DNA of 64,000 bases, taken from positions 186,001 to 250,000 of the IMG/VR virus record IMGVR_UViG_3300036715_004471. The stretch is one strand, 5' to 3'. Made by a program: the position numbers and the translations under genes. This document shows positions 48,204 through 62,371 of the stretch, one piece after another. The notes under the pieces were generated by a model. The model was not told where the DNA came from. It worked only from the letters and a program-made list of their open reading frames with translations, and did not search any database. The number at the start of each line of letters is the position of its first letter. The first letter of the stretch is position 1.

Positions 48204-49217
48204 TTAGGCACCGATTACGACAGACTTACGACCAGCAGCAACACCGCGAGGGTTGACGATGGCGATACCAATTTCTTCGCTTACTACCCAACCAAGCTTC
48301 AATTGCTTTGGCTCGTCGGCTGGAAGAACTTCGATATCTTGTCTAATTGGCATAACACCAACGAACTCAGGATCGGCAGCTCCGTAGATGGTTCCTGGTG
48401 GAACAATCTTGCTTACCATGATGTCAGTACCCCAGATGTGAGCATAAAGACCGGTTTGTAGAACTTCTCTCATTGTGACAGGATCGAAATCACCACCACC
48501 AACGCCTTGTCCACCACCGCTACCCCACTTTAGAATATCAGTGAATTCATTGATATTCATGAAGTACTTAGTTATAACCAAGTCCCAACGATCGATTTGT
48601 TGCTTGATTTCAACAAGGTCTCTCTTCAAAAGACCGGCATCAGCGATGTCAGTTAGGGTGTTTTCAACAGAAGCTGCGGCATCAAGTGCTGCGAAAATGT
48701 TGGCATCTTCTTGAGCCATGATTTCTTGACGAGCCTTCTGTACAGATCTGTCAATTACATTGAATCTACGACGTCTAACTTCGTTAATTCTGACAGTTGG
48801 GTTTGCGTAGATTTCGAAGGTAGGTACTACTACTCTATCACCGAATACTCTGGATTCTGGACCAGTACCGTTAGAGGAAATAACAACGGCTGAAACATCG
48901 ATATCTCTATCATATGTTGGTTGAGCACCTTGAGGTAGAGGATCTACAACTAAGGCTCTACGTGCGATACCATGGTAATCCAAGTTTCTACGAATTGGGT
49001 TTGCCATAGCTTGAGCTAGAGCAATTTTACCGTCTTGAGTCATAATAGCACGAGAGATCAACTCGTCGCGTCTGTCATCACTCAAGGCTACTTGACCGGC
49101 TAATCCCATATTAGCTGGTTGATTCTCTTCCAAAATTGCTGCATACTTAACTAATTGCTGCAACATATCCTTCAAAGAGGATGCGTTCATTGCGCCTTGG
49201 TTGTTGAACATATTCAT
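48204..49217 (-). CDS. Major capsid protein (HK97-like fold)
   Basis: IALAQAMANPIRRNLDY...VVVPTFEIYANPTV...QKARQEIMAQEDANIFAAL...GWVVSEEIGIAIVNP; strong RBS AGGAG; follows a cement gene and is followed by a terminator. Confidence 0.85.
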   Translation of the reverse strand: MNMFNNQGAMNASSLKDMLQQLVKYAAILEENQPANMGLAGQVALSDDRRDELISRAIMTQDGKIALAQAMANPIRRNLDYHGIARRALVVDPLPQGAQPTYDRDIDVSAVVISSNGTGPESRVFGDRVVVPTFEIYANPTVRINEVRRRRFNVIDRSVQKARQEIMAQEDANIFAALDAAASVENTLTDIADAGLLKRDLVEIKQQIDRWDLVITKYFMNINEFTDILKWGSGGGQGVGGGDFDPVTMREVLQTGLYAHIWGTDIMVSKIVPPGTIYGAADPEFVGVMPIRQDIEVLPADEPKQLKLGWVVSEEIGIAIVNPRGVAAGRKSVVIGA

Positions 49218-49244
49218 ATAAAGTTTCTCCTAAATGGAATTTTT

Positions 49245-49328
49245 GCCAGTTTTACCAGCGAAACATATTCTAAAAGATGAGGGGTCTCCCCGAAGAGAGT
49301 TAAAAATCCCAGCCCCTCGACTGGGATT
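49245..49328 (-). promoter_or_regulatory. Structured RNA leader of the capsid gene (three hairpins, possible pseudoknot)
   Basis: AATCCCAG/CTGGGATT stem with GAGGGG in its loop, CTCTC-TTCG-GGGAG hairpin, downstream CCCCTC, and GCTGGT-AAA-ACTGGC. Confidence 0.5.
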
Positions 49329-49335
49329 AAATCAA

Positions 49336-50007
49336 TTAAGCTGATGGTGGATTGAAGTAGAAAGTTGCGAAAGCAAAAGTGTTATTCAATGCAGTAACTA
49401 GAGAGTTTGGAGTAGTGACAAGAGAACCATTGGTCTCAAAGTCAATGAAACGTCCAACAACTACGCTGTTACCTGCGGCAGCAGTGCTTCCAACTGGAGT
49501 CAATTGACCACCAGAAGCGCTAGCTGGTACCCAAGTCAATGCAGCGCCAGTATCTAGAGTGGTATTAGTTGGTTGTAGACCGTCCACAGAAGCAGTGTCA
49601 CATGCATCCAAAGATACGGCGTAAATACCTGGCTTCTCCCACAAAGTAACTTTACCAGAACCCAAAGCAGTGTGAGGTCCTAGAACCACACCACCAGTAA
49701 TTTGTTGACCAACAGTACCACCAACAACTGAACCAAACAAGGTTCCATATCCAGAAATACCATCATCACACAACATAAGTGGTCTCTTGGTAGTAGCAAC
49801 GTTTCTGGTTACAGCAACCCTCTTGACAACTGAAGAAGGATCTACATATCCATCAAATACATCATGAGATGCTTTGTCGGTTGCAGAAGTTGCAACAACT
49901 GAAGTGAAGGTAACGATTTCTCCACCCTTCAAAGTCAAAAATTCTGTATCAAGACCATCGTATTGACCCAAAGGTTGTACGCCTGGTTGTAATAGTTTTA
50001 ATGCCAT
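49336..50007 (-). CDS. Capsid decoration/cement protein
   Basis: Directly precedes the MCP; about 220 aa, beta-rich, with GSGKVTLW and VVGRF motifs typical of cement proteins. Confidence 0.65.
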   Translation of the reverse strand: MALKLLQPGVQPLGQYDGLDTEFLTLKGGEIVTFTSVVATSATDKASHDVFDGYVDPSSVVKRVAVTRNVATTKRPLMLCDDGISGYGTLFGSVVGGTVGQQITGGVVLGPHTALGSGKVTLWEKPGIYAVSLDACDTASVDGLQPTNTTLDTGAALTWVPASASGGQLTPVGSTAAAGNSVVVGRFIDFETNGSLVTTPNSLVTALNNTFAFATFYFNPPSA

Positions 50008-50084
50008 TTGTTTTTCCTATAATCTTTAATGCCGTATAAATACAATCGGCACGATAACTTACACCTAAACTTACTAAATCACTA

Positions 50085-50147
50085 ACATATTTTCTTATTG
50101 ATATAATCAAAGCAAAATATGCGAAAGTTAACTACATATTTTCTTAT
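50085..50147. repeat. 14-bp direct repeat ACATATTTTCTTAT x2 with an inverted core between them
   Basis: Copies at 50085-50098 and 50134-50147; AAAATATG at 50114-50121. Confidence 0.7.
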
Positions 50148-50155
50148 GCCTAGAA

Positions 50156-51409
50156 TTATAATCCGTCTGATAAATCTTTTTCTAGATCAGCAACTTCATC
50201 ATCAATGCTTTTTGGTTTACCTGGTGCTTTACCTTTTCCATTTGTTGGAGCAGATGGTGCTTCAGTAGCTTTTTCTCCAGTTAATTCCGCAGTATCAGCA
50301 GCCGCGTCCTGTATTTTTTGTTGAGCAGATTTCTCAATAGATTCTGCGTTTTTTAATAGAGATACCATTTCAGCAACAGATTTTTTGTAAGGAGCGATAG
50401 CTCTAACTACATCATCAAAATCATCTGCTACTAGTCCTTTTCCACCATGAAAAATTTGAGTTTTATCAACCAAAGATGACATAAAACCCTTATCTTCTAT
50501 TTGTCTAGCTTTATAGCTTTCAGAAGAAAAATTCTTTTCTACAGCCACAATGTATGGCAACATGTTGCTAGCTGCTGATTTTAATGTTCCATAAGCTTTA
50601 ACTACTGAATTAGTTGCCGGAGCTTTAGACAATGCTATTAAATCCTTAGCAGTTCTTGGTCTTTCCAGATCAGTAATAAGTGGCTCTACTTTATCGTATA
50701 AATCATGAAAACTAACTAACTTACTTTTAAAATCTTGTACCATATCTTTGAATTCTGATTTGTAGTCATACCCAACTCCCCATGAAGCACTGGCAGTTAA
50801 CAAATCATCAATTTCTGCAATCAACTTATTATGATTTTTATCAAAACCTTCATTGATAAAAGACATGTGTTGTTGTACGTATAATGATCCTAAAAGAATT
50901 GGAATGGCAATTAATACGGCAGTTTGAACGAAAGCTTTCTTTTGTAATTGTGGTTGCGCAACTTGCATCAAACAAGTATCGGCTAAAGCTCTAAGCTTAT
51001 CTTCACTTCTATTATCTAGATCGTTACCCAATCTAACTAATGATAATATCAAATCTTTTTCAGCATATTTATGTTGTGTTAAATGACCATCTGGAATTTT
51101 ATTTACAATGTTAATAATAATGTTTTGTCTTTCTATATTATTCTCTACCAAACCATTTAGTTTATCATGAGATGGTGCGGCAATATAAGATGTAGGATGA
51201 GCATCTTCCATAATGTTCTTTTTATACTCATTTCCTTTTGCCATTTCAACTTTAATACCATAAAGCTTAGCAATATCCTCTTCACTCAAAGAATCTGCCC
51301 TATGAGTTCTTTCAAGTATTTTCTTTGCTTTTTCAGGAGCATCTTCAGAAATCAATCCCTTTTCTTGGGCTATTTTGAAAAAGTTTTCTAAAACGTTATT
51401 GTTGCTCAT
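50156..51409 (-). CDS. Putative internal head/ejection protein (417 aa)
   Basis: Lies between protease and MCP; hydrophobic helix after LQKKA; N-terminus paralogous to 55269..56381. Confidence 0.5.
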   Translation of the reverse strand: MSNNNVLENFFKIAQEKGLISEDAPEKAKKILERTHRADSLSEEDIAKLYGIKVEMAKGNEYKKNIMEDAHPTSYIAAPSHDKLNGLVENNIERQNIIINIVNKIPDGHLTQHKYAEKDLILSLVRLGNDLDNRSEDKLRALADTCLMQVAQPQLQKKAFVQTAVLIAIPILLGSLYVQQHMSFINEGFDKNHNKLIAEIDDLLTASASWGVGYDYKSEFKDMVQDFKSKLVSFHDLYDKVEPLITDLERPRTAKDLIALSKAPATNSVVKAYGTLKSAASNMLPYIVAVEKNFSSESYKARQIEDKGFMSSLVDKTQIFHGGKGLVADDFDDVVRAIAPYKKSVAEMVSLLKNAESIEKSAQQKIQDAAADTAELTGEKATEAPSAPTNGKGKAPGKPKSIDDEVADLEKDLSDGL

Positions 51410-51449
51410 TCAATTCTCTCTATGGCTGAAATTATACGATAATACCAAC

Positions 51450-52526
51450 TTATGTAGTCCTATCAGCTACATCATCAATGAAGTAGTCGACAATTTGCTT
51501 TTTAGATCCAAAATATCTTGGCAGCCAAATCATGGGTGATTCGGGACTGGAATGATTATATTGAACAATTCTATCTTTGACAACTTGAAATGCTGGAGAA
51601 CTTTTAATAAGACTCTCTTTCCCGTCTAAACCATCATATACTGTTTTAGCAAAATTGACTAACATATATTCTATAGAGCCAGAATTATTAGTTACTCTTT
51701 CCATCCAAAGAGAATCTCCAACATTGTATTTCTCTGGAGCATAACCAGATTTAACTGGAAACTTCTTTTGTTTAGATACATTGACTGGAATAGCACTTTG
51801 AGATGATTGATCAATCGGCTCTCCCTTCTGCATTGTTCCGTCAAGTGCGTTAGGTCTATTTAAGAATTTGTTAACTACATCGCCGGCTACCACGAGCCCG
51901 GCAGACGCCAAAGCAACCTTAAAAATCCAACTTAAAACCCTGGTTAAAATAAATGCTGTTCTGGATTTTCTAGCACTAAACATTTCAAAAAATCCAGCCT
52001 CTTTTTTAAAGGCTCCACTTTGATAACTAATCATTGCAATCTTAACGAATTTAGCATCTCTTATCATTTTAGATGCAGATTTAGTTTTAGATGCTTGATC
52101 AGCCTCATCTTGAGTGGCAGGCGTGTAATTTTCTTGAACAGCTTCTTGCACAAAAGAATCTACTTGAGAAGAAGAAACTGGTTTATCACCAACAGTTACA
52201 GATTTAATCTTACTCCAAATAGAATTAATTATATTTTTAACATTGATATTGAAAACTCTCATTGATAATCCAATAAGCGCTCCTAACCAACCTAATCCCA
52301 TACTAGAAAAAGCAACAGAAATAACACCAGGTCCTAAAATATTGATTAAACTGCCTACTTTATCTTCTGGATTAACGTGACCGCTTACATAGTTCTTAAC
52401 TTTTTCTGTAAGTGTCGCCACCATACCACCAACTTGAGCTTGCTTAAATAGCTGCTCATCTTTTAAGATGGTTTCTACAATAATGCTATCAACGTAGAAA
52501 TTTATTTCGCTACTATTACTTCTCAT
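51450..52526 (-). CDS. Putative internal head/ejection protein with hydrophobic helices (358 aa)
   Basis: GVISVAFSSMGLGWLGALIGL and LSWIFKVALASAGLVVAG segments; ATGA overlap. Confidence 0.5.
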   Translation of the reverse strand: MRSNSSEINFYVDSIIVETILKDEQLFKQAQVGGMVATLTEKVKNYVSGHVNPEDKVGSLINILGPGVISVAFSSMGLGWLGALIGLSMRVFNINVKNIINSIWSKIKSVTVGDKPVSSSQVDSFVQEAVQENYTPATQDEADQASKTKSASKMIRDAKFVKIAMISYQSGAFKKEAGFFEMFSARKSRTAFILTRVLSWIFKVALASAGLVVAGDVVNKFLNRPNALDGTMQKGEPIDQSSQSAIPVNVSKQKKFPVKSGYAPEKYNVGDSLWMERVTNNSGSIEYMLVNFAKTVYDGLDGKESLIKSSPAFQVVKDRIVQYNHSSPESPMIWLPRYFGSKKQIVDYFIDDVADRTT

Positions 52527-54085
52527 TGTTTACCTAGGGCTGCTTGAAAATTAGCCATTAATGATTGAACATCTCTTAAGTTTTGAGAATAAATAGAATT
52601 TGGACCCAAATATTGAGCCTCAACTAATGATTTCTGTTCACCATTTAATGTAACTCTATCTTGAGAGTATTGAGTTCTTGCAAATTCATTATAGAAGGCT
52701 CCCAAAACTTTTCCAACCTCTACTATTACTTGTTGTAATGCATATATAAATTGCAAGCCATTATTACCAGCAGGTGGTCTAAGCCAGGCGGCAGCCTCTT
52801 GTACGTTTCTAGTTATTCTGAAATTTTGTTGACTTCCTGTTAAAGTCAAAGAAGATGCTGTAGTCATAGCTTGCAAAGCTGTACCCATAGCACCAATAGC
52901 AGATTGAGCATTATCATGAGAAGTTATACGTACATATAAGGTAAAGAAATTCTTAATTCTGTTGAAATCTATATCTTGAGGATCAAGTGGCAAAGTTTGA
53001 ACCATTTGCTCCATGATTTGACCAGTTACTGATCTATCAGGCGCTCCGCCTCCACCTTGAGGGCTCATAAAGTAATGTTTATTGCTGACGTTTGAGTCTA
53101 CAGATGAACCAATAGAACAAGCCTTGCCCCAAGGATCAGTAAATGCTGGTCCTAATTGAGAAATTTTGTTCAAATAGAAACTGTATTTTTTAGTGTCATC
53201 GGGAGAAGCTGCTGTCCTAGCAAGATTATAAGCCCTCTTATATAAAACATTGACAATGTTACAGTGGTTTGCTTCTGGATCCGTAAACTTATTGTGAGTT
53301 TGTCCAGAAACTATTGTGGCTTCAGGCGCCTGTCTCATCCAAGAATTCAATGATTCCTTACTTGATAAATCCTTAGCTGTCAAAACCAATGGACCTTTGT
53401 CAGTATAAGGATTATTGACATCGAAAACCTTAGTTCCAAAACTATCAACAACTGTATCAAATGGCATTTCATTTGGTTTATCTGGTCTAGATTTTGGTGC
53501 TCTAGATAAGCCGGAATCAGGCTTGATAGCATTAACTGAATCTATTAACTTACCAATCATTACTTCTAAAACTCTGCCTTGAACATCACCATTTCTTTTT
53601 AGTTCTTGAGCTTTGTCTTGTAAATGAGAAACGTATTTTATCAAAATTGGCAAATGAGTATAAAAATCAGCCGTAGTCCATTTCCTAGATGTTTCATCTC
53701 TTGAAACGTTCACGGAAACAGGTGCTAATTTATTTCTTTCCTCTTCATTTAAAGTATTTGATTCCGCTTCTGGGTAAACAACACGAATACCATCAATTTT
53801 GATTTTATTGGTAGCCATGAATTGTAATAACCTACCTAATGACTGAAGTTGGTTGACTCCTAAATCAATAGATCCTGCTGTGTCAGCAGAAATATTAATT
53901 GGCTCGACAGCCCCTGCAAATTCTCTAGATAATTTGCTAACTAGTTTTTTAGCAACATCATTTGGTGATAATGGTTGTTCACCGCGTGGGGATGCCGTTG
54001 GCGCCTCTTGAGCATTCTTCTTCAAAATCTTATTAAGAAGACCTTGATAAATAGCTTCATCATATATTTCGTGTAGAAAAGACAT
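52523..54085 (-). CDS. Putative internal head protein (520 aa)
   Basis: Short N-terminal helix ending LKKNA, then a Pro-rich linker. Confidence 0.5.
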   Translation of the reverse strand: MSFLHEIYDEAIYQGLLNKILKKNAQEAPTASPRGEQPLSPNDVAKKLVSKLSREFAGAVEPINISADTAGSIDLGVNQLQSLGRLLQFMATNKIKIDGIRVVYPEAESNTLNEEERNKLAPVSVNVSRDETSRKWTTADFYTHLPILIKYVSHLQDKAQELKRNGDVQGRVLEVMIGKLIDSVNAIKPDSGLSRAPKSRPDKPNEMPFDTVVDSFGTKVFDVNNPYTDKGPLVLTAKDLSSKESLNSWMRQAPEATIVSGQTHNKFTDPEANHCNIVNVLYKRAYNLARTAASPDDTKKYSFYLNKISQLGPAFTDPWGKACSIGSSVDSNVSNKHYFMSPQGGGGAPDRSVTGQIMEQMVQTLPLDPQDIDFNRIKNFFTLYVRITSHDNAQSAIGAMGTALQAMTTASSLTLTGSQQNFRITRNVQEAAAWLRPPAGNNGLQFIYALQQVIVEVGKVLGAFYNEFARTQYSQDRVTLNGEQKSLVEAQYLGPNSIYSQNLRDVQSLMANFQAALGKQ

Positions 54086-54092: not shown

Positions 54093-55262
54093 TTAAATTG
54101 TTGCTATTTTAGGCTTGATGATCTTATTAAAGATATCTACAGCAGCTGACTCTGCATTACCAGCATAGTTAACCATCCACTTAATATATTCATCTTTGCT
54201 ACTTAAAGCTTTGAGTGGAATATAGTTTAATTTCTTATTTGGTAAACCAGGTGCAGGATACGTTACATCAATTGGTATCTTAACAGCATCTGATTTACTC
54301 ATTTGTATTTCTTGAGGAGTTAAAGTATCTTTATTACTGCCCTGCGCAGAGTATCTATCAAACGATCTTTTACCCTCTATAGTTGGTCTGAATTCTGGTC
54401 TAGCTAAAACTTGTTGTCTAAAATGACCATATAACTTAGTAATAGCTTTCAAATGCTTTGAAATAGCAGATGCCCTTACAGCTTTTTGTACAGTAGGTAG
54501 TTTAACTAATCCATTTTCTAGTTTATAACCCGTCAAAGCTTGATTAAACTTTTGCCAATTATCGAAAGTATATATGTTATTTTCTAATCCAAAGTCACCT
54601 TCTAATTGTAACAAAGCATAAGCAAAACCCATAATGTTTCTCAAAGCATTATCAGTTCTAAAATCCCATTTACCATCTACTACAAACTCTTTAGTACTTG
54701 CACCAATTCTACGAAGTGTGTCCATAACAACATCTAATTCGTAAATATCAGTTTGTGTTTTTTGTTTACCAGGAAGTGTTGTGACTTGTTTATTAGTTGT
54801 CCACTCAACACCTTTCTTATCTTCATCTAATCCGCCCAAATATTGTTCAGCAATGAAATCATTGAAGCTCTTTTTGGCGGTCTTCTGCTCTCCTGTAGCT
54901 CCTGGTTGTTGAGCATCTCTTGGTTTAGCTGCCATTGTTCCAGATTCTGCATCTGTAATAACAGCTTGAGCAAGAGTTTGCATAGCCGTTTGCATTTCTT
55001 TAACAGCAGCAATGGCGTTAGCAATTTGTTGTGGAGAATTACCAGGCTGTACTTTACCTTTATTCAAAGCAGGTACTCTTCTTCTTATTTCGGGTCCAAG
55101 CTTTCTAGCTAAAGGTACCCCAGAAGACGGGGTAGCAGGAGTAGGGGCGGCAGGCGCGCTAGGATCAGCAGGTTTGGTTTTTTTAGGACTTTTTCTTACT
55201 GGAACAGGAACATCACCTGGCTCATCGGCATATTTTTTAATCAAATCTAATTTCTCAGACAT
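54093..55262 (-). CDS. Putative internal head protein (389 aa)
   Basis: IKKYA then a Pro-rich linker; VDGKWDFRTDNAL resembles a peptidoglycan-binding motif. Confidence 0.5.
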   Translation of the reverse strand: MSEKLDLIKKYADEPGDVPVPVRKSPKKTKPADPSAPAAPTPATPSSGVPLARKLGPEIRRRVPALNKGKVQPGNSPQQIANAIAAVKEMQTAMQTLAQAVITDAESGTMAAKPRDAQQPGATGEQKTAKKSFNDFIAEQYLGGLDEDKKGVEWTTNKQVTTLPGKQKTQTDIYELDVVMDTLRRIGASTKEFVVDGKWDFRTDNALRNIMGFAYALLQLEGDFGLENNIYTFDNWQKFNQALTGYKLENGLVKLPTVQKAVRASAISKHLKAITKLYGHFRQQVLARPEFRPTIEGKRSFDRYSAQGSNKDTLTPQEIQMSKSDAVKIPIDVTYPAPGLPNKKLNYIPLKALSSKDEYIKWMVNYAGNAESAAVDIFNKIIKPKIATI

Positions 55263-55268: not shown

Positions 55269-56381
55269 TCAATCTATCCAGTTAGATTTGAATTCGCTGA
55301 AAGAAGGGGTAGTAATCTTCTTTAGATTTCCCAACAATATAGATGCATTTTGTTCTTTTTCTTCGTCTTCCATGCCCTCTAATTGTGCTTTAACACCTTG
55401 TACTTGATTCATTTTAGCAGAAATCCATTGATTAGCTTGTTTTTTTTCAGCATCTTCTAAATCCGGATCTGTAGCTATTTTAGCTTGAAATCCTTTCAAT
55501 ACAGAAAAAGCATTTCCTAACCACTTGTTAAGAATGTTTAATTGCGAAGCTACTTTAGGGGCGGCGGCAGCCGGTTCGGATAAAGCTTTCTGTATTGTAC
55601 CTAAAGCAGTATTGGCTTTAGCAAATAATGATGTCATTCCTGCCCAAGTTTCATTAGGCACCCCGCCAATAATTGTTCCTGGCTTAAAAGCACTATAGAA
55701 ACTATCTAATCCTAATTTGATCATTGGCAGAATTCGTTCTAATGAGGAAGGATTGCCAGCGTTACTAATGGCTTGATTAATATAATTAATTAAAGTGTCT
55801 TTACCAGAAGCGATTGGTCTAGTTAGGAAGCTTTGATCTTCGTGTAATACAAAAATAGTTTGAACAGAATTCAACACAATATTCAAATTTTGAACTATTG
55901 TTGGATTGGCGGCTTGTGCTAAAACAATTTTAACAGATCTTAAAATATCTTTATTTGAAGCTAATTTACCAGTAGGTTTCTTTTCAGTAAGTTTAATGCC
56001 AGCAAGGTGTTGATCAATAATCGTTTCGATAACGTTATCTCCATCCATATCAGTTAATTTATGAGAACCTTTTGGATGAGCCGCATCAACTAAATCTTCG
56101 TCCTTCTCTTTGGAAGTTTCATAAAGAGTTTGTGCACTCTTATAAGACATGAATTTAGACTCAACATCATCAGCATATTTATCTAAACCTGATGCTCTTA
56201 AACCTGAACATAGCTTCATAATATTTTCTGTTAGGTTAACAGAAATAGATAAATCAGTCTCATTAAGAGAGGCAATTTTAGACAAAGATTTTACTGGAGG
56301 AAGCCAGCCCTTATCTCTTGCTACTCTTTCTAAAGAGCGCATGGTAACAGAATCTTCGAATTTTACATGCTTAAAAGTCAT
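55269..56381 (-). CDS. Putative internal head protein (370 aa)
   Basis: GAGG RBS; N-terminus paralogous to the 417-aa protein. Confidence 0.5.
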   Translation of the reverse strand: MTFKHVKFEDSVTMRSLERVARDKGWLPPVKSLSKIASLNETDLSISVNLTENIMKLCSGLRASGLDKYADDVESKFMSYKSAQTLYETSKEKDEDLVDAAHPKGSHKLTDMDGDNVIETIIDQHLAGIKLTEKKPTGKLASNKDILRSVKIVLAQAANPTIVQNLNIVLNSVQTIFVLHEDQSFLTRPIASGKDTLINYINQAISNAGNPSSLERILPMIKLGLDSFYSAFKPGTIIGGVPNETWAGMTSLFAKANTALGTIQKALSEPAAAAPKVASQLNILNKWLGNAFSVLKGFQAKIATDPDLEDAEKKQANQWISAKMNQVQGVKAQLEGMEDEEKEQNASILLGNLKKITTPSFSEFKSNWID

Positions 56382-56631: not shown

Positions 56632-57318
56632 TTAATACCAAAGAACTTCAATCATTGGGTTCATAGTTGTAGGGGGAGCTGTGACCATACCTACAGCGGG
56701 ATGAATAATACTAGGTCTACGAGTAGTTAAAAATCCAACTTCACTAACATACAAATTAGCTTTAACAGGATATTGCTGATTGGTTTCATATTGATCAGTT
56801 TGAAAAAACATTCTATTAAACCAAACAGTTACTCTACCAGATCCCTGAGTGCTATCATCTCCGGGAATATTGGCAACTTGATAAGTATAATTCACAATTG
56901 TTTTAATACCATTTGGTTGCCCTGTACCCATGATATCTATATTTAAAGGCGTACCAGCCAAAAAAGTAATAACTCCGTTAACTGGATTCAAAGTAACTTT
57001 AACTGTAGATGAAAAACTGGTTGAAACAATATTTGGTCTTCTTAATTCGGCTTTAATATCAATTGGTGTAACTAATATACCACCAGATGCCACTCCAACC
57101 GCAGGCACAATTACTTCTTCATTCCACGAAACATTGGTAAAAGCCCTGGTTTTAATATCATCAATAATGCCAAGAGGCGCCGTGCCATTACTGACAGTTG
57201 CCATTACTTGGTTTCCTAATACTGTTAATTCTGCTATTTGTCCCGGCTGAAATTCAGCTGAAGGATCGCAAATAAAACTGGCAGGAAGAGTATTTCCAAC
57301 TTGAACTAATCTAAGCAT
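56632..57318 (-). CDS. Second cement/decoration-like protein (paralog of 49336..50007)
   Basis: Shared motifs MLRLVQVG/MALKLLQPG, PLGIIDD/PLMLCDD, GSGRVTVW/GSGKVTLW. Confidence 0.55.
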   Translation of the reverse strand: MLRLVQVGNTLPASFICDPSAEFQPGQIAELTVLGNQVMATVSNGTAPLGIIDDIKTRAFTNVSWNEEVIVPAVGVASGGILVTPIDIKAELRRPNIVSTSFSSTVKVTLNPVNGVITFLAGTPLNIDIMGTGQPNGIKTIVNYTYQVANIPGDDSTQGSGRVTVWFNRMFFQTDQYETNQQYPVKANLYVSEVGFLTTRRPSIIHPAVGMVTAPPTTMNPMIEVLWY

Positions 57319-57375
57319 GAGTATCCTTTGTGTACACCACTCTATACAACTCTCATACTTAATATAACAGTTGAA

Positions 57376-57780
57376 TTAATCTCTTTCCTCTTCAAAATCG
57401 TGTAATTCTATACCCATATCTCCATCAGATACTTCTAATGTATCCTCTACATCAACATCAAGTAAATTATTTGCTTCACCATCATCTGATAAATTCATTG
57501 GATGACCATGGTCCTTCAAATTATTAACCATTTTTTCAGGAGTTAATCCATTGGTATGACGATCACTTGGGACTTGGGTTTTGTTAGCAATCTTTTCCAA
57601 AATGTTAACAATTTTCTCGGCATTTCTACTCATACCAAGATTTTCAAAAATCTCGGCAGCTGAATTTAAATAATCCACAGCCTGCTCAAGATTATCACAA
57701 TCTTGTTGAGTAGCTTGCTTCACCAATTGGCGATGCATACCAGAGATCAATTCTTCTTCAAAAACACTTTTTTTGATCAT
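57376..57780 (-). CDS. Small head-associated protein, helical-module family (134 aa)
   Basis: Paralog of 57791..58021; acidic tail. Confidence 0.6.
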   Translation of the reverse strand: MIKKSVFEEELISGMHRQLVKQATQQDCDNLEQAVDYLNSAAEIFENLGMSRNAEKIVNILEKIANKTQVPSDRHTNGLTPEKMVNNLKDHGHPMNLSDDGEANNLLDVDVEDTLEVSDGDMGIELHDFEEERD

Positions 57781-57790
57781 GGTTTCTGCC

Positions 57791-58021
57791 TTATTTAACT
57801 GAAGTCTTACCTAATTGTTTTGATAAACCTTGCAAGACTTCCGTTACCTCAGCTGCCTCACTATACATACCTGCTTTGTCAAATAATGACGCAGCAGCGT
57901 TTAAGTAATCGGCAGCTTTGGAGATCTTATCAAAGCTGAATTTGTTTTCCAATTGGTTAGAAACCAATTTAGTTTCCATCGAACGATAAATTTCGTCTTC
58001 AAAGCTGCCGGTCTTAAACAT
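57791..58021 (-). CDS. Small head-associated protein, helical-module family (76 aa)
   Basis: FEDEIYRSMETKLV and AADYLNAAASLFDKAGM match the neighbour's FEEELISGMHRQLV and AVDYLNSAAEIFENLGM. Confidence 0.6.
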   Translation of the reverse strand: MFKTGSFEDEIYRSMETKLVSNQLENKFSFDKISKAADYLNAAASLFDKAGMYSEAAEVTEVLQGLSKQLGKTSVK

Positions 58022-58023
58022 GA

Positions 58024-58725
58024 TTATTTCTTCTTAGCAAAAGGGAATGGTTTCTTGGAACCTGAACCCGAAGATTTTGAACTGCTGCTGGAACTAGAAG
58101 AAGATGGCTTCTTTTTTGCTCTAGCATCATTAGAATCTGATTTCTTTCCAGAAGAACTGCTCTTCTTTTTATCATCTTCCTTCTTTTTCTTGGCTCTGGC
58201 ATCATTAGAATCTTTGCTGCTCTTCTTAGGATCGCTCTTCTTCTTAGAATCACTTTTCTTCTTTTCATCCTTCTTCTTGGCTTCAACAACCAAGGAAGCT
58301 AGTTTCAAGCTTAATGAGGATCCCTTTTCAAGACCTGCACGGTCAAGAGCTGCGGAAGCAGTCAAAAGACTGTCAATTGCAACATCTAAAGCAGAGGATT
58401 CTAGATCTTCTGAATCATCGGCACAAGACTTATCTTCTTCTTCCATGTCGGAAGCATTGTGCTCGTCAACAGCACCATCAAAGGCGCTGCTAGAATCTTC
58501 AGAATCGTCCTTCTTCTTTTTTCTAGCATCATTATCATCATATGCGCTATGTGAATCGCTAGAACAGCCATCCTTTACGCCGTGAGTTGGACATATAGTG
58601 TCATTCGCAAAACTTTCGTCAGATGCAAATTTGTATGTACCACCGAACAATGATTGGTGAGCTTGGCTCTTTAATACTGCATCCATTGTTGCAGCAACAA
58701 AATCTGATACGCTTTTATTTCTCAT
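58024..58725 (-). CDS. Low-complexity Lys/Ser/Asp-rich head protein; start revised to ATG 58725
   Basis: AGAGGA RBS; acidic middle, very basic C-terminus with NDAR(A/K)KKK repeats. Confidence 0.65.
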   Translation of the reverse strand: MRNKSVSDFVAATMDAVLKSQAHQSLFGGTYKFASDESFANDTICPTHGVKDGCSSDSHSAYDDNDARKKKKDDSEDSSSAFDGAVDEHNASDMEEEDKSCADDSEDLESSALDVAIDSLLTASAALDRAGLEKGSSLSLKLASLVVEAKKKDEKKKSDSKKKSDPKKSSKDSNDARAKKKKEDDKKKSSSSGKKSDSNDARAKKKPSSSSSSSSSKSSGSGSKKPFPFAKKK

Positions 58726-58750
58726 TTGTTTCCTCTTGGTGTCTAAAACT

Positions 58751-61700
58751 TTAGAACATTCTCTTGGAAGTCTTATTGAATGCTGCGGACAATAATGACC
58801 AGTCATCTTCCACTTGTGCTACGTTATTTTCACCAGAACCAAGTATTCCTACTTGAGGCATACGACCAGCTTCTTTACGCATTGTTGGGCTGTGTTTTGC
58901 AACTACTCTCTTCAAAGTATCGAAACTGTCGTCGTTAAACTTCATGATTTCATCAACTTGTGAGGCGATAGCGATCTTATCGCTGTGGCATAAACCACGG
59001 TCAACCATATCGTAAGCTACTTCGTAAGCTCTTGCAAGCTTGACTTTGTATTTGTTCAACTCATCTTCCATTTGAGCCTTGACATGTTCTTTGACTAATT
59101 CACTGGCGAATTCACCACCACCGTCAACTTGACTGAAGTATTTCTTGTAATAAGAAACAGCATCCTTATCTAGACCTTCTGATACTAGAGCATCAAGATC
59201 AGCTGGGTCAAGTTTACCTTCACTAATTAATCTGTGAATGGCTTCGGCTTCTTTACGAACCTTTGGTGGAGCTTTTGCAAGATCCATCATAGCCTTGTTA
59301 ACTTCTGAAAGGGTTTCTACATAACCCATGTTATCAGATGGCTTGGTATCAAGACCCTTGACTTGACCGTCGGCTAGATTATCGGCTGTATCCATAATGT
59401 CGAAGAATTTAGCTCTAGACATATCTTGAAGTTGTCCGTCATCTTGCTTACCAGTTGGATCAAAAGCGAACTTTCCTAAAGCTTCAGCAGCCAACTTAGC
59501 ACGCATTACGTTGCGCCTTGATCTGTTATCAAAACCAGCAGTTACTTGAACTGTTGTTCCTGGCTTGACATTCAAGTCTTTCAACTCTTCTTTGTTAGCC
59601 ATTAGATCATTGTCATCAGCAAGTGCTGAACCATCAAAAACTTGATCTTGACCGTCAGGACCTTCTTCACCCAAATCTGGGAAACTTTCATCTTCTCCTA
59701 AGCCTTCGCCCAAATCTTCGGAACCGACAGAACCTTCATCCAAATCTTCAAGAGTTGGATCCGCATCACCATCTGTCATGTGAGCGTTATCATCATCGTC
59801 CATCATTTCTTTGACGGAACCTAAATCCCTATTTGTATCTTCAATAAGAGCCATTAAGCTGTCATCGCCACTACCACTCATAGATTCTCCCTCAGCCTCA
59901 GCAAGTGCTTCAAGTTCTGCTTCGATTTCAGCACGTTTGACGATAGCTTTGGTGCCACGAGCATATTTAACGAAGGCAGTCATTAGTCTGAAACCATCTG
60001 CAACGGCAGTCTTGGCTTCGTTTGTTGCATCTTCTAAGATAGAATTAACTAGATCTTCATTGGAGCCAGTAACCGCTCCCTTGTCATATAATCCTACAAT
60101 AGTGCTCAATTCTTCTTCGTGATCGTTAAGCTCAGCAATTACTTCCTTCATGGCGCTAGTCATAGACTCATTCAATTCGCCTCTCAAGGAATTCATTTGC
60201 TCTGTGCTAAAGTCTGAGGCAGTAGCACCCATTTCGGCACCACTAGCACCAATGTCAGCGCCCATTTCAGCTTGTTCACCAGTCAAAGCTCTTACAGCCT
60301 CTACTAGATCAGAGGAAAGGTCTCTAACTTTTTCAGCCAACTCAACTGCGGATTCTTTTGGATCACCAGTTTTACCAGTATCTTCTCCAGTAGGAGCAGC
60401 ACCGGCACTAGGATCAACTGGAGGGGCAGCGGGAACTGCGGCGCCAGCAGAAGGATCAGCAGGAGGTGGGGTTTGAGCATTTTTTACCAAATCACGGACT
60501 CTATCAGCACCGTAAACTTTAACTTTTTCAAGTAATCTTTGACCGAATTCAGCGGTATTAATGGTATCGTACATCATTTCAGAACGACCACCGGAAAGTT
60601 CTCTAACAGAGGCAGACAATAATAGTTTGTCTCCTAAACGAATTTCCCATGCGCTGTTTTCTAGATCTCTGGTTCCATCATTTCTAGAAGCTCTAACGAA
60701 TCTACCATGTAGAGTATTAGCTCTACGTAGCATTTCTTTACGCTTTAATTCATCAGAAGTGTCTGCTGATTCTGGGCTTGGGTGTAAGCCGTCTACTTTG
60801 CCTACATCTGGGAATGGCTTTTGACCATGCATGTGCTTATCATCTTCGTAAGCCATGTGACCCTTATCAGCTGGATACTTTGGTTTACCCGGAGTTGGAG
60901 CGCCCGGATTCTTATCGTCTCCATTTAAGAAGTAAGCCTTTTTCTCTTCCAAAGCTTGCTTGGCAAGGTTTACAATTGCTTGACGACGCAAAGCCTTTTC
61001 TTCTGCATCGGCACGAGCAAGCATTCTCTTACGCTCTAGCTCGGAGACTCCGGAGCTTTCAACACCAGGGTGCATACCATCAACTGGTCCTATATCTGGG
61101 AATGGCTTTTGTCCATGAAGATGCTTGTCCTCTTCATAAGCCATGTGACCTGGATCCTTTGGATATTTAGGTTGACCAGGGGTAGGTTCTTCCGTTCCTT
61201 GGTAGTAACCTTGTTTATTCATTTCTCTTGAAGACATAGTTTCCTCGTGTATATTTGTAGACTTTGCTAACTTATCCAAACTTTGTTTCATATGATTCAA
61301 TTTTGCTTCGATTGCTGCTGTAACTTCACGCAGCTCTTCAATTGAAGTCGTTTCAATTTTAGATGAAGCAAATCTTGCATGTGGTGGAGCTAATCCAGAA
61401 TCAGTATTAGGAGTTTCTATCTCATCATTTATAGAGATAGAACCTGAAGATTGATTAAATGCAAGATCATTAGTATCTTTTTCAGAATTTTCTACAGAAC
61501 TATTTATATCCTGTAATTTTCTGAATGCTGTCTCGATATCTTTTTTGAATTCTTCGAAGGCACTTTGAGATGATAATTTGCCAAATTCCTTAGATTTATT
61601 CTCAAGATAAGTATTCAGAGTATGAGCAGAAGCAATAATGTGTTTAATATTTGCTTTAGGATCGGCGCCATTAACTACAATGGATAATTCAATTGGATTC

Positions 61701-62371
61701 AAATCCACATTGATTTCACCATAACCAGTCTTACGCCTCATGTGTTCACAAAAATCTGCCTCAGCTCTAGCTACAGTAGCACAATCACTACAAATGGCTC
61801 TACCTACAGCGGTACCCATAGATACGCAGTTAGAATAACCAGTAGAAACCTTTCTAGCTAAATCTGGATAATTATGTTTGTCTAAAGCACAAAGAGCAAT
61901 TACTCTTTTCAAATTACGATCATAATAAGTATCAACAATAAAACCTCTTACATGATCGACTGAGCTTGATTTATGATCTATGCAAAGAGGCTTGTGAACC
62001 CATTTTTTATAAGCTTTTACTAATTCTTCTTCCGGAAAAATATCTCCATTAGAATTCTTATATGGCTTGATGCTTGGATCATTAGATGTCCAGCGCCAAG
62101 TGCCACCTCTTTTATCCCAACCAACTTGTACTTGTTCTCCTCTAGCATTTAGCTTGAGAGTACCATCATCGTTGAGAGAAGATGCCTCAGCAGCATGCAT
62201 CATAACAGCTGAGAAATACAAAAAGTCTTCAGCCTTAGGAGCTATCTTCTTAAGATTAGCGGCTGTTTTTCTAAAATTTTCCAATACTTCAGCACTGACT
62301 GCCGGAATACAAGATTCTGTATTCTCAATTCTGCTGATTTCAATAAGTTCACCCAATTTGACAAATGGCAT
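58751..62371 (-). CDS. Prohead protease-scaffold fusion (HK97/assemblin-type protease domain)
   Basis: N-terminal domain with PLCIDH (His), CVSMG (Ser) and IELSIVVNGADP; remainder acidic and coiled-coil, scaffold-like. Confidence 0.75.
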   Translation of the reverse strand: MPFVKLGELIEISRIENTESCIPAVSAEVLENFRKTAANLKKIAPKAEDFLYFSAVMMHAAEASSLNDDGTLKLNARGEQVQVGWDKRGGTWRWTSNDPSIKPYKNSNGDIFPEEELVKAYKKWVHKPLCIDHKSSSVDHVRGFIVDTYYDRNLKRVIALCALDKHNYPDLARKVSTGYSNCVSMGTAVGRAICSDCATVARAEADFCEHMRRKTGYGEINVDLNPIELSIVVNGADPKANIKHIIASAHTLNTYLENKSKEFGKLSSQSAFEEFKKDIETAFRKLQDINSSVENSEKDTNDLAFNQSSGSISINDEIETPNTDSGLAPPHARFASSKIETTSIEELREVTAAIEAKLNHMKQSLDKLAKSTNIHEETMSSREMNKQGYYQGTEEPTPGQPKYPKDPGHMAYEEDKHLHGQKPFPDIGPVDGMHPGVESSGVSELERKRMLARADAEEKALRRQAIVNLAKQALEEKKAYFLNGDDKNPGAPTPGKPKYPADKGHMAYEDDKHMHGQKPFPDVGKVDGLHPSPESADTSDELKRKEMLRRANTLHGRFVRASRNDGTRDLENSAWEIRLGDKLLLSASVRELSGGRSEMMYDTINTAEFGQRLLEKVKVYGADRVRDLVKNAQTPPPADPSAGAAVPAAPPVDPSAGAAPTGEDTGKTGDPKESAVELAEKVRDLSSDLVEAVRALTGEQAEMGADIGASGAEMGATASDFSTEQMNSLRGELNESMTSAMKEVIAELNDHEEELSTIVGLYDKGAVTGSNEDLVNSILEDATNEAKTAVADGFRLMTAFVKYARGTKAIVKRAEIEAELEALAEAEGESMSGSGDDSLMALIEDTNRDLGSVKEMMDDDDNAHMTDGDADPTLEDLDEGSVGSEDLGEGLGEDESFPDLGEEGPDGQDQVFDGSALADDNDLMANKEELKDLNVKPGTTVQVTAGFDNRSRRNVMRAKLAAEALGKFAFDPTGKQDDGQLQDMSRAKFFDIMDTADNLADGQVKGLDTKPSDNMGYVETLSEVNKAMMDLAKAPPKVRKEAEAIHRLISEGKLDPADLDALVSEGLDKDAVSYYKKYFSQVDGGGEFASELVKEHVKAQMEDELNKYKVKLARAYEVAYDMVDRGLCHSDKIAIASQVDEIMKFNDDSFDTLKRVVAKHSPTMRKEAGRMPQVGILGSGENNVAQVEDDWSLLSAAFNKTSKRMF

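What the first reader, a model, noticed from the sequence alone, without database searches (positions are those of the whole stretch)
48204..62371. Recurrent hydrophobic-x-K-x-A motif: candidate new prohead-protease cleavage code
Head-region proteins carry [LIFM]-x-K-x-A, often at the junction of an N-terminal helix and a linker or new domain: MCP LVKYA (aa 22-26); 417-aa FFKIA, LQKKA; 358-aa LFKQA, FVKIA, FKKEA; 520-aa LKKNA; 389-aa IKKYA; 370-aa LSKIA; 134-aa LVKQA, LEKIA; 76-aa ISKAA; protease FRKTA, LKKIA, LDKLA, LVKNA, FVKYA, MRKEA; also 232-aa LRKRA, LIKNA. T4 and phiKZ-type proteases cut after Glu, whereas herpes assemblins of the same fold cut after Ala. A K-x-A rule would be a distinct specificity and a way to predict head cargo genome-wide.
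Basis: partly seen in the sequence, partly recalled or inferred. Interest (0 to 1): 0.75.

Follow-up and report, generated by a model that had tools for sequence, protein, structure and literature searches.

The report
Head-protein cleavage motif in a megaphage
The head genes of this 446-kb phage G-like megaphage share a conserved short motif (bulky hydrophobic residue, any, Lys, any, Ala) that is most likely the undescribed cutting signal of the phage's capsid-maturation protease; this could be tested directly by mass spectrometry on cultured phage G.

Summary
[LIFM]-x-K-x-A occurs 27 times in the 12 proteins of 48204-62371, against 6.4 expected from per-protein shuffles (z about 8). The tail part of the window and the rest of the 446-kb genome are at expectation. 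Reversed, shifted and Glu versions of the pattern are not enriched. An unbiased count of all three-residue gapped patterns puts L.K.A first.

The motif lies within the first 45 residues of 12 of 21 head-module proteins, against 40 of 620 elsewhere. It is retained in orthologues that are only 25-60% identical, as an island of invariant K and A (sometimes G) in variable flanks. It recurs in the head modules of Bacillus phage G, Tunturi_5 and Rctr197k, where Arg often replaces Lys.

The "protease" is a 1206-aa polyprotein. Residues 46-248 have the T4 gp21 / herpes assemblin fold with invariant His133 and Ser184. The rest is helical and disordered, with motif copies at helix-to-linker junctions.

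The best reading is a new prohead-protease recognition motif. Cleavage itself is not shown, and the cut position (after Ala, or after Lys) is unresolved. About a third of the listed instances are chance matches.

The parts
58751..62371 (-). 1206-aa protease-scaffold-like polyprotein. It carries 10 strict motif copies, and 15 if V, R and G are allowed.
   Evidence: ORF. PHROG head maturation protease phrog_18299, E 2.6e-14, aa 106-214. 34% identical to phage G gp19 over aa 35-248. 1638 homologues, mostly 1100-1600 aa. Motif 1069 observed against 303 expected in 136 long homologues.
61628..62236 (-). Protease domain, aa 46-248, with invariant His133 and Ser184 and a Cys194/Cys197/Cys208 cluster.
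   Evidence: AF2 model, pLDDT 82. VIA-align Z 10.5 to T4 gp21 (5jbl) and Z 8-10.2 to herpesvirus proteases, covering aa 46-248. Invariant columns in a 47-sequence alignment.
62261..62275 (-). FRKTA, aa 33-37 of the polyprotein, just upstream of the protease domain. Candidate self-processing site.
   Evidence: K35 and A37 are at least 90% conserved in 47 homologues. The motif is kept in 99 of 118 long homologues. The same place in phage G gp19 reads LVKTA.
60476..60490 (-). LVKNA, aa 628-632 of the polyprotein. Candidate site at the end of a helix, before a Pro/Ala-rich disordered linker.
   Evidence: Kept in 26 of 28 orthologues with variable flanks and A/G exchange, and in 79 of 118 homologues. 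Helix end followed by a stretch with pLDDT under 50.
58868..58882 (-). MRKEA, aa 1164-1168 of the polyprotein. Candidate site that would release the C-terminal tail.
   Evidence: Kept in 25 of 28 orthologues with A/G exchange. Lies at a helix-to-disorder junction.
60953..60967 (-). LAKQA, aa 469-473 of the polyprotein, at the end of the helix between two tandem repeats of about 95 aa.
   Evidence: Kept in 21 of 28 orthologues. Helix end before a disordered repeat. Repeats read directly.
61265..61279 (-). LDKLA, aa 365-369 of the polyprotein, at the end of a helix before the first repeat.
   Evidence: Kept in 18 of 28 orthologues. Junction position.
48204..49217 (-). Major capsid protein, 337 aa.
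   Evidence: phrog_2522 major head protein, E 1e-77. 54% identical to phage G gp27 from aa 45 onward.
49140..49154 (-). LVKYA, aa 22-26 of the MCP, inside a roughly 44-aa N-terminal extension that phage G gp27 lacks.
   Evidence: Kept in 55 of 56 relatives, but these MCPs are 88-95% identical, so that count says little. Tunturi_5 MCP has LLKSA at aa 17-21 and Rctr197k MCP has LTRFA at aa 83-87.
51368..51382 (-). FFKIA, aa 10-14 of the 417-aa protein.
   Evidence: Kept in 47 of 50 orthologues that average 43% identity.
50933..50947 (-). LQKKA, aa 155-159 of the 417-aa protein, in a hypervariable linker rich in indels.
   Evidence: Kept in 39 of 50. K 94% and A 82% conserved, against flank identity of 4-22%.
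52437..52451 (-). LFKQA, aa 26-30 of the 358-aa protein.
   Evidence: Kept in 36 of 43. K 95% and A 91% conserved, against flanks of 0-50%.
51996..52010 (-). FKKEA, aa 173-177 of the 358-aa protein.
   Evidence: Kept in 23 of 43. K 86% conserved in variable flanks.
54011..54025 (-). LKKNA, aa 21-25 of the 520-aa protein.
   Evidence: The alignment is poor here (2 of 29 kept in register). Counted without alignment, 83% of orthologues carry the motif in their first 60 aa.
55227..55241 (-). IKKYA, aa 8-12 of the 389-aa protein.
   Evidence: Kept in 25 of 33 orthologues that average 28% identity.
56271..56285 (-). LSKIA, aa 33-37 of the 370-aa protein.
   Evidence: Kept in 9 of 15. K and A 80% conserved in flanks of 0-20%.
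56172..56186 (-). LDKYA, aa 66-70 of the 370-aa protein.
   Evidence: Kept in 14 of 15.
57586..57600 (-). LEKIA, aa 61-65 of the 134-aa protein. LVKQA at aa 19-23 (57712-57726) is less conserved.
   Evidence: Kept in 8 of 14, with A/G exchange, for LEKIA; 6 of 14 for LVKQA.
47321..47335 (-). LIKNA, aa 42-46 of the 232-aa protein downstream of the MCP.
   Evidence: Kept in 47 of 47. K and A are invariant, the upstream flank is variable, and the next four residues (FDTR) are invariant.
49336..50007 (-). 223-aa protein with no motif. Probably a capsid cement or decoration protein.
   Evidence: No motif. Only 18% of orthologues have one near the N-terminus. Its feature look-alikes are Phage_cement clusters, which is a lead only.
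56632..57318 (-). 228-aa conserved protein with no motif.
   Evidence: No motif. None of 28 orthologues has one in the first 60 aa.

Best explanation
Proposed mechanism. Phi-x-K-x-A (Phi = L, F, I or M; K is sometimes R; A is sometimes G) is the recognition and cleavage motif of the phage's prohead (capsid-maturation) serine protease. The protease is made as the N-terminal domain (aa 46-248) of a 1206-aa protease-scaffold-like polyprotein. This layout is analogous in logic to herpesvirus UL26 and to the T4 gp21 plus gp22 core.

Inferred steps:
1. Head proteins enter the prohead carrying short N-terminal propeptides that end in the motif.
2. After shell assembly the protease removes these propeptides. 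Substrates would be the MCP N-terminal extension, the portal N-terminus, and the 417-, 358-, 520-, 389-, 370-, 134-, 232- and 246-aa proteins, among others.
3. The protease also cuts its own polyprotein at helix-to-linker junctions, so that the scaffold fragments can leave or rearrange before DNA packaging.
4. The three determinants at i, i+2 and i+4 fit a substrate bound as an extended strand.
5. The cut most likely follows Ala (P5 hydrophobic, P3 Lys, P1 Ala, with Gln or Ser favoured at P1'). I put this register at about 60%, against about 35% for a cut after Lys.

Shown: the enrichment, position and conservation of the motif, and the protease fold with its conserved His and Ser.

Inferred: that the motif is cut, by this protease, and at which bond.
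For: Enrichment and specificity:
- Enrichment is specific to the head module: 27 against 6.4 expected, z 8; the genome-wide scan finds only the 228-270 kb block.
- L.K.A is the top pattern in an unbiased enumeration.
- Control patterns and the Glu-type motifs of T4 and phiKZ are flat. In the head module [LI].E has z 2.3, [SAG].E z 0.9 and herpes-type [VLI].AS z 2.0, against z 8.2 for the motif.

Position:
- The motif lies in the first 45 aa of 12 of 21 head-module proteins, against 40 of 620 elsewhere (Fisher p 4e-9).

Conservation:
- In orthologues 25-60% identical the motif is kept at a mean of 0.68, against 0.11-0.51 for 12 control patterns (p 2e-7). In variable flanks the figures are 0.58 against 0.17 (p 2.5e-5).
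- Counted without alignment, 83-100% of orthologues of the motif-bearing families have it in their first 60 aa. The figure is 0-21% for the 223-, 228-, 260- and 325-aa families.
- The motif-bearing proteins are not paralogues, apart from the 134-aa and 76-aa pair.
- Across 24 conserved sites: Phi is L 43%, F 24%, I 21%, M 7%; K 95%; A 92% and G 5%.

Protease:
- Fold match Z 10.5 to T4 gp21 and Z 8-10 to herpes proteases. H133 and S184 are invariant.
- Motif copies flank the protease domain and sit at helix-to-disorder junctions of the polyprotein.
- The motif is 3.5-fold over expectation in 136 diverged polyprotein homologues.

Other phages:
- Phage G has the same motif in gp9, gp13, the gp14 portal, the gp19 protease and gp20: 11 against 3.1 expected, 0 of 500 shuffles.
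- Tunturi_5 and Rctr197k have it at the MCP N-terminus and in the protease fusion.

Register:
- Pro is depleted at both x positions and at +1. Gln is 3.9-fold and Ser 1.8-fold enriched at +1.

Precedent:
- T4, phiKZ, 201phi2-1 and SPN3US proteases cut head proteins at short motifs, mostly releasing N-terminal propeptides, with several sites in scaffold and inner-body proteins (PMC9026906, PMC10052503).
Against: - No proteomic or biochemical evidence of cleavage exists for this phage or, in the papers I could read, for phage G.
- The complex prediction of the protease domain with the MCP N-terminus gave no verdict.
- Two well-conserved copies (FVKYA800, IVKRA810) lie inside a confidently predicted long helix, and LKKIA40 is followed by an invariant Pro. 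Not every conserved copy can therefore be a simple accessible site.
- Phage G's MCP has no propeptide, so MCP processing is not universal in the group.
- The block upstream of the terminase (genome 258-269 kb) is also enriched. It contains an HNH endonuclease whose three matches come from an internal repeat, so enrichment alone does not prove head location.
- P3 = Lys with P5 hydrophobic differs from the P3-hydrophobic rule of T4 and herpes enzymes. This keeps the cut-after-Lys register open.
Confidence: 0.7

Rival explanations
1. The motif is the protease's site, but the scissile bond follows Lys: Phi at P3, Lys/Arg at P1, Ala/Gly at P2'. This would be a charge-reversed copy of the T4 rule (L/I)-x-Glu. 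It is a sub-variant of the best explanation, and its probability is counted inside the 0.7.
For: T4 and herpes enzymes of this fold take a hydrophobic P3 (PMC9026906; herpes consensus from general knowledge). Arg replaces Lys in relatives: Phi-x-R-x-A is 2.6-fold over expectation, and it is common in Rctr197k. This resembles a basic P1 pocket. The LKKIA-Pro copy would be cleavable in this register.
Against: In every characterised member of the fold, P1 and P3 are the strict positions. Here that pairing fits K and A only if Ala is P1. The A-to-G exchange fits a small S1 pocket, as in herpes assemblins. Pro is depleted and Gln/Ser enriched right after Ala, as expected for P1'.
Confidence: 0.25
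2. The motif is a capsid-targeting or scaffold-docking signal that is bound but not cut. It could be a strand or helix end recognised by the scaffold part of the polyprotein or by the inner MCP surface.
For: It is biased to N-termini, like the T4 capsid targeting sequence (PMC9026906). It is conserved. Some copies lie within helices. The upstream residues often look like an amphipathic helix.
Against: In T4, targeting and processing sit in the same short propeptide, so the two roles do not exclude each other. Many copies are internal and lie in hypervariable linkers or at domain boundaries of a polyprotein (417-aa site 155; polyprotein sites 365, 469, 628 and 1164). That position suits cutting better than docking. 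Determinants at i, i+2 and i+4 do not share one face of a helix.
Confidence: 0.12
3. The sites are cut by a different protease, such as one of the two phage ClpP homologues or a host enzyme.
For: The genome encodes two ClpP genes at 310.3-311.5 kb. [quoted passage not shown]
Against: ClpP degrades processively and has no such sequence rule (general knowledge). Prohead proteases usually destroy themselves and leave the head, so the absence of gp19 from virions is expected. The motif brackets the gp21-like protease domain itself and co-occurs with that family in G, Tunturi_5 and Rctr197k.
Confidence: 0.04
4. Chance, amino-acid composition or shared ancestry of Lys/Ala-rich helices. No function.
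For: The head proteins are somewhat richer in Ala (9.3% against 6%). About a third of the individual matches are not conserved.
Against: Composition-preserving shuffles give z 8. Permuted patterns are flat. The motif is conserved far above the control patterns. The proteins are unrelated to one another. The motif recurs in distant phages.
Confidence: 0.01

Closest known systems
T4 gp21 prohead protease and its (L/I)-x-Glu sites; capsid targeting sequences of the T4 internal proteins
   Same: The protease fold matches (Z 10.5 to 5jbl). The motif is short, with determinants two residues apart. Propeptides are N-terminal on many head proteins. There are several sites in the scaffold and core. A motif copy lies near the protease's own N-terminus (T4: LIE-9, PMC9026906).
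   Different: The specificity residue is Lys (or Arg) plus Ala, not Glu. A third determinant is present (Phi, K, A). The protease is fused to about 950 aa of scaffold-like sequence. [LI].E is not notably enriched here (z 2.3 against 8.2).
phiKZ gp175, 201phi2-1 and SPN3US gp245 proteases (S/A/G-x-Glu, A-x-Glu)
   Same: These are giant phages in which many head and internal proteins are trimmed at a short motif. The motif can be used to predict substrates and is redundant within propeptides (PMC10052503, PMC9026906).
   Different: They cut after Glu. [SAG].E and A.E are at expectation in this head module. The MCP lineage is unrelated (phrog_2522, the phage G group).
Herpesvirus assemblin (UL26 and homologues), (V/L/I)-x-Ala|Ser
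   Same: The fold matches (Z 8-10.2). The protease is made as the N-terminal domain of a protease-scaffold fusion that cuts itself. Ala is the probable P1 and a small polar residue is favoured at P1' (Gln/Ser here). The human cytomegalovirus release site Y-V-K-A|S, recalled from general knowledge, even contains K-A.
   Different: Here Lys sits two residues before Ala (P3) and the hydrophobic residue at P5. Herpes sites have a hydrophobic P3 and an invariant Ser at P1'. [VLI].AS is only mildly raised (z 2.0). The protease here has a Cys-rich insert.
Bacillus phage G gp19 (head maturation protease), gp20, gp21
   Same: gp19 is a direct homologue (34% identity over the protease domain). Its N-terminal motif pair is at the same place (LVKTA, VVKIA-P). 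The motif is enriched in gp9-gp21.
   Different: In phage G the protease is a separate 300-aa protein followed by gp20 and gp21, and the MCP has no N-terminal extension. No cleavage rule has been published for phage G in the papers I could search. The 2020 structure paper (PMC7316594) was not available.

Membership tests
Prohead (capsid maturation) serine protease of the T4 gp21 / HK97 gp4 / herpes assemblin fold | Assemblin-like fold | tested here: met
   AF2 model aa 1-333, pLDDT 82 (above 90 over aa 50-240). Z 10.5 to T4 gp21 5jbl and Z 8-10.2 to six herpesvirus proteases, over aa 46-248. Foldseek probability 0.9-0.97.
Prohead (capsid maturation) serine protease of the T4 gp21 / HK97 gp4 / herpes assemblin fold | Conserved catalytic His followed by Ser | tested here: met
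   H133 (in D-H-K-S-S-S) and S184 (in V-S-M-G-T) are invariant in 47 homologues. Calling them catalytic is an inference from their order and spacing. No residue-level superposition was available.
Prohead (capsid maturation) serine protease of the T4 gp21 / HK97 gp4 / herpes assemblin fold | Sequence-family match and a position between the portal and MCP genes | tested here: met
   phrog_18299 head maturation protease, E 2.6e-14. Gene order is terminase, portal..., polyprotein..., MCP. No Pfam family was matched.
Prohead (capsid maturation) serine protease of the T4 gp21 / HK97 gp4 / herpes assemblin fold | Proteolytic activity and self-processing | not testable with these tools
   Needs expression of the domain with a Ser184Ala control.
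Prohead-protease cleavage motif (class exemplified by T4 L/I-x-E and phiKZ/SPN3US S/A/G-x-E) | Motif over-represented in head proteins and not in tail or non-virion proteins | tested here: met
   Caveat: the enriched block also covers 13 ORFs of unknown role upstream of the terminase.
Prohead-protease cleavage motif (class exemplified by T4 L/I-x-E and phiKZ/SPN3US S/A/G-x-E) | Sites mostly delimit short N-terminal propeptides; several sites in the scaffold and protease | tested here: met
   12 of 21 proteins against 40 of 620 have the motif in the first 45 aa. The polyprotein has 10-15 copies, at junctions.
Prohead-protease cleavage motif (class exemplified by T4 L/I-x-E and phiKZ/SPN3US S/A/G-x-E) | Motif retained in homologous proteins of related phages | tested here: met
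   Phage G, Tunturi_5 and Rctr197k.
Prohead-protease cleavage motif (class exemplified by T4 L/I-x-E and phiKZ/SPN3US S/A/G-x-E) | Cleavage C-terminal to Glu | tested here: not met
   [LIFM].E.A 4 against 4.9 expected. [SAG].E z 0.9, A.E z 0.5 and [LI].E z 2.3. The signal is Lys/Ala, so this is not a member of the Glu-specific group.
Prohead-protease cleavage motif (class exemplified by T4 L/I-x-E and phiKZ/SPN3US S/A/G-x-E) | Mature termini of virion proteins map to the motif | not testable with these tools
   No proteomic data are held. The supplements of the phage G multi-omics paper are not available, and that search used strict trypsin rules.
Herpes assemblin-type site (V/L/I)-x-A|S | Hydrophobic P3, Ala P1, Ser P1' | tested here: not met
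   Two residues before Ala, Lys is found in 95% of conserved sites. +1 is Gln 16%, Ala 13% and Ser 12%, not an invariant Ser. [VLI].AS has z 2.0.

The most novel reading that the evidence does not exclude
A large, globally abundant clade of phage G-like megaphages, with more than 1600 protease homologues in metagenomes, uses a capsid-maturation protease with a previously undescribed three-point specificity: Phi-x-Lys/Arg-x-Ala|Gln/Ser. In this reading the motif acts as a portable packaging-and-release tag. It would let one read off from sequence alone the whole set of proteins loaded into these very large heads, including the 13 unannotated ORFs upstream of the terminase. The 1206-aa protein would be a self-dismantling protease-scaffold polyprotein, convergent with herpesvirus UL26.
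Probability: 0.55. Interest if true: 0.75.

Novelty: new variant of a known kind. Interest (0 to 1): 0.62.

Why it matters
Prohead-protease specificity has been mapped for only a few phage lineages: Glu-specific in T4 and in phiKZ-like phages, plus a handful of others. Where it is known, the motif has been the main handle for finding head-internal and ejected proteins, and for building packaging vectors such as the T4 capsid targeting system.

A distinct Lys/Ala rule for the phage G group would have three uses:
- It would widen the known specificity range of the assemblin fold, with Ala as probable P1 as in herpesviruses.
- It would give a sequence-only predictor of head cargo for uncultured megaphages, whose virion proteins are almost all unannotated.
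- It is immediately testable, because phage G is cultured and carries the same motif in its portal, protease and neighbouring proteins.

Tried and rejected
- Complex prediction of the protease domain (aa 46-262) with MCP aa 1-48: no verdict (score 0.00). This counts neither for nor against binding.
- Sequence search of the N-terminal 333 aa against PDB chains: nothing. The fold had to be predicted.
- Pfam on all head ORFs and on the polyprotein's C-terminal 967 aa: no family. PHROGs names only the MCP and the protease.
- An NCBIfam call failed on a frame error and was not repeated.
- Foldseek of the C-terminal 967-aa model against viral models: no credible match. Phage G gp21 appears only at rank 46, probability 0.63.
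- ESM Atlas look-alikes for the 417-aa protein: nothing usable.
- Literature: five full-text searches found no description of a Lys/Ala prohead-protease motif or of phage G head processing. The 2020 phage G structure paper and the supplements of the 2025 multi-omics paper were not held.
- The MCP homologue search returned only relatives 85-95% identical, so it gave no information on how widespread the motif is.
- A DNA-level motif was rejected, because synonymous codons vary as in the background.
- Paralogy as the source of the recurrence was rejected, except for the 134-aa and 76-aa pair.
- Phage G gp19 could not be included in the alignment used for structure prediction, so it was left out.

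Full report
**Setting.** The window is bases 186001-250000 of a single 446,541-bp virus record. G+C is about 34% and nearly all genes are on the minus strand. The 337-aa ORF at 48204-49217 is the major capsid protein: phrog_2522, E 1e-77. It is 54% identical to Bacillus phage G gp27 from residue 45 onward. Just beyond the window end lie the portal (615 aa) and the large terminase (626 aa). IMG/VR holds hundreds of relatives, with contigs up to 480 kb. Their MCPs are 88-95% identical, but their other head proteins are only 25-60% identical. That difference is what makes a conservation test possible.

- [LIFM].K.A occurs 27 times in the 4518 aa of the interval, against 6.4-6.6 expected when each protein is shuffled (z about 8; 0 of 1000 shuffles reach 27).
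- The tail half of the window (11-13 against about 10) and the rest of the genome (113 against 107) are at expectation.
A.K.[LIFM], [LIFM].A.K, KA, AK, K..A and [LIFM].E.A are all flat in the same proteins.
- Counting every three-residue pattern at 14 spacings in the head block against the rest of the genome puts L.K.A first: 26 against 4.4, p 1.8e-12.
- A sliding scan of the whole genome lights up only one block, 228-270 kb.
- Codons in the motif vary as in the background, so this is a protein-level signal.

**Position.** Twelve of 21 head-module proteins carry the motif within their first 45 residues, against 40 of 620 other ORFs (odds ratio 19, p 4e-9). The carriers are not paralogues, apart from the 134-aa and 76-aa pair.

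**Conservation.** I aligned each head protein with its distinct orthologues from 140 fetched loci.
- The motif, scored as [LIFMV]xKx[AG], is kept on average in 68% of orthologues, against 11-51% for twelve control patterns of equal degeneracy (Mann-Whitney p 2e-7). Where the flanks are poorly conserved it is 58% against 17% (p 2.5e-5).
- Typical cases are islands of invariant K and A in variable sequence:
  - 232-aa site 42: kept in 47 of 47, followed by invariant FDTR.
  - 417-aa site 155: K 94% and A 82% conserved in flanks of 4-22% identity, with indels.
  - 358-aa site 26, 389-aa site 8 and 370-aa sites 33 and 66.
  - Polyprotein sites 33, 628 and 1164.
- Ala is sometimes replaced by Gly and Lys rarely by Arg. 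Across 24 conserved sites the first position is L 43%, F 24%, I 21%, M 7%; K is 95%; A is 92% and G 5%.
- Counted without alignment, 83-100% of orthologues of the motif families have the motif in their first 60 residues. The figure is 0-21% for the motif-free 223-, 228-, 260- and 325-aa families.
- Several instances are not conserved and are probably chance: 232-aa LRKRA22, 417-aa LLKNA351 and IEKSA358, 76-aa ISKAA33 and polyprotein LGKFA965.

**Outside the window.** The ORFs between the polyprotein and the portal show 7 copies against 2.9 expected. A block of 13 ORFs upstream of the terminase shows 17 against 4.7, and many of those sites are conserved in relatives: 227-aa site 42 in 18 of 18, 130-aa site 11 in 17 of 18, 608-aa site 272 in 16 of 16, 236-aa site 86 in 16 of 16 and 157-aa site 21 in 13 of 13. 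One member of that block is an HNH endonuclease whose three matches come from an internal repeat. Enrichment alone is therefore not proof of head location.

**The protease.** The 1206-aa ORF matches the PHROG head maturation protease only over residues 106-214, and phage G gp19 over residues 35-248.
- An AlphaFold model of residues 1-333 (pLDDT 82) aligns with T4 gp21 at Z 10.5 and with six herpesvirus proteases at Z 8-10.2, over residues 46-248.
- His133 and Ser184 are invariant in 47 homologues, as are Cys194, Cys197 and Cys208 of an inserted loop.
- The family is large: 1638 cluster representatives at E no greater than 1e-3, most of them 1100-1600 aa.
- In 136 long members the motif is 3.5-fold over shuffles and Phi-x-R-x-A is 2.6-fold over, while permuted controls are at 0.8-1.1.
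- A model of residues 240-1206 (pLDDT 63) shows long helices, one small beta domain, two tandem repeats of about 95 aa, and Pro/Ala-rich and acidic disordered stretches.
- The conserved copies with variable flanks (365, 469, 628, 1164) each sit at the C-terminal end of a helix, immediately before a disordered segment. Copies 800 and 810 lie inside a long helix.
- Copy 40 (LKKIA) is followed by an invariant Pro and leads into the first strand of the fold.

**Other phages.**
- Phage G, which is cultured, has the motif at the N-termini of gp9, gp13, portal gp14 and gp20, seven times in protease gp19 (including the same pair before the domain), and twice in gp21. Counts are 11 against 3.1 expected for gp9-21 (0 of 500 shuffles) and 1 against 2.0 for gp24-54.
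- Phage G's MCP lacks the N-terminal extension.
- Tunturi_5 (MCP 34% identical) has LLKSA at MCP residues 17-21.
- The high-G+C virus Rctr197k has a 999-aa protease fusion with ten Phi-x-K/R-x-A copies, and LTRFA in its longer MCP extension.

**Interpretation.** This combination is the pattern established experimentally for T4, phiKZ, 201phi2-1 and SPN3US (PMC9026906, PMC10052503):
- enrichment restricted to the head module;
- short N-terminal leaders;
- many copies in a protease-scaffold protein, at domain junctions;
- conservation of three residues only;
- co-occurrence with a gp21/assemblin-fold protease.

The motifs of those phages end in Glu. Such motifs are not enriched here: [SAG].E has z 0.9 and [LI].E z 2.3, against z 8.2 for the motif. 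I therefore take Phi-x-K-x-A to be the recognition motif of this protease (confidence 0.7).

Determinants at i, i+2 and i+4 suggest binding as an extended strand. The scissile bond is not determined.
- For a cut after Ala: P1 and P3 are the strict positions in all known enzymes of the fold; Ala exchanges with Gly; Pro is excluded from both x positions and from +1 once the structural IAP strand is set aside; and Gln (3.9-fold) and Ser (1.8-fold) are favoured at +1.
- For a cut after Lys: Phi-x-K resembles T4's L/I-x-E with the charge reversed, and Arg is tolerated in place of Lys.

A non-cleaved docking signal, another protease (two ClpP genes lie at 310 kb) and chance are the remaining rivals. 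Chance is excluded by the tests above.

**Comparison and novelty.** The system works like the T4 or phiKZ maturation system, and in gene layout like herpes UL26. The enzyme passes the fold, catalytic-residue and gene-context tests for the family. The motif fails the defining "after Glu" feature of the phage motifs, and the "hydrophobic P3, Ser P1'" feature of herpes sites. I found no paper describing it, although the key phage G paper of 2020 could not be read. I class it as a new variant of a known kind. Decisive tests are listed separately; the simplest is semi-specific or top-down MS of phage G virions.

Noticed in passing
homologues P0006, P0035 and P0011 of window 58751-62371; insertion point corresponds to about aa 104/105, window about 62057-62060: Some homologues of the polyprotein carry an intein in the protease domain, just before the invariant N106-x-N108-x-D110 block. 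It is about 370 aa where the Hint domain comes with a LAGLIDADG homing endonuclease (P0006, P0035) and shorter in P0011, where only Hint/splicing domains matched. The window's copy has none.
   Followed up: partly
window 61745-61792 (aa 194-209 of the 1206-aa ORF): An invariant Cys194-x-x-Cys197 ... Cys208 cluster (followed by His in many homologues) forms an insert in the protease domain. It looks like a small zinc-binding loop. As far as I recall, T4 gp21 and herpes proteases have no such insert.
   Followed up: no
window 60686-61222 (aa 384-562 of the 1206-aa ORF): Two tandem repeats of about 95 aa (...PTPG.PKYP...HMAYE.DKH.HGQKPFPD.G.VDG.HP...), predicted disordered. Each is preceded by a motif-like K-x-G/A-Y, and they are conserved across the family. 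Their function is unknown.
   Followed up: partly
window 62351-62365 (aa 3-7 of the 1206-aa ORF): The extreme N-terminus, F-x-K-x-G-E, is nearly invariant in the family (115 of 118; K5 invariant) and fits the Gly variant of the motif. It could be a very short leader or a pseudo-substrate.
   Followed up: no
L125:1167-2144 (-) = genome 251167-252144, just beyond the window end: A 325-aa protein with a glucosaminidase (PF01832) domain sits between the portal and the protease polyprotein, and has no motif. It may be a virion-associated cell-wall hydrolase. Phage G also has an endolysin (gp22/23) inside its head module.
   Followed up: no
L125:2146-3480 (-) = genome 252146-253480: In most relatives the 444-aa ORF starts at the Met of MQKTA, so the window's start is probably called 16 codons too early. 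The protein would then begin with the motif itself. A 252-aa ORF at genome 262919-263677 likewise starts MNKTA.
   Followed up: partly
genome 310327-311467 (L148, L149), outside the window: Two tandem ClpP homologues (E 1e-48 and 5e-47). One match contains an in-frame TGA. The neighbouring 12-kb window shows a weak motif excess (z 2.8).
   Followed up: no
L125:13830-14732 (-) = genome 263830-264732: An HNH endonuclease-like ORF whose three motif matches (FIKKA, FVKEA, MIKNA) arise partly from an internal repeat (F-[IV]-K-[KE]-A-N-x-I-H-N-x-K-Y). It has almost no orthologues in relatives, so it is probably a mobile insertion that inflates the motif count upstream of the terminase.
   Followed up: partly
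window 57376-58021: The 134-aa and 76-aa ORFs are paralogues (32% identity, E 5e-10). They are the only related pair among the motif-bearing head proteins.
   Followed up: yes
window 36757-37694 (+): Three small ORFs (147, 59 and 99 aa) lie on the plus strand and interrupt an otherwise uniformly minus-strand structural region. They were not examined.
   Followed up: no
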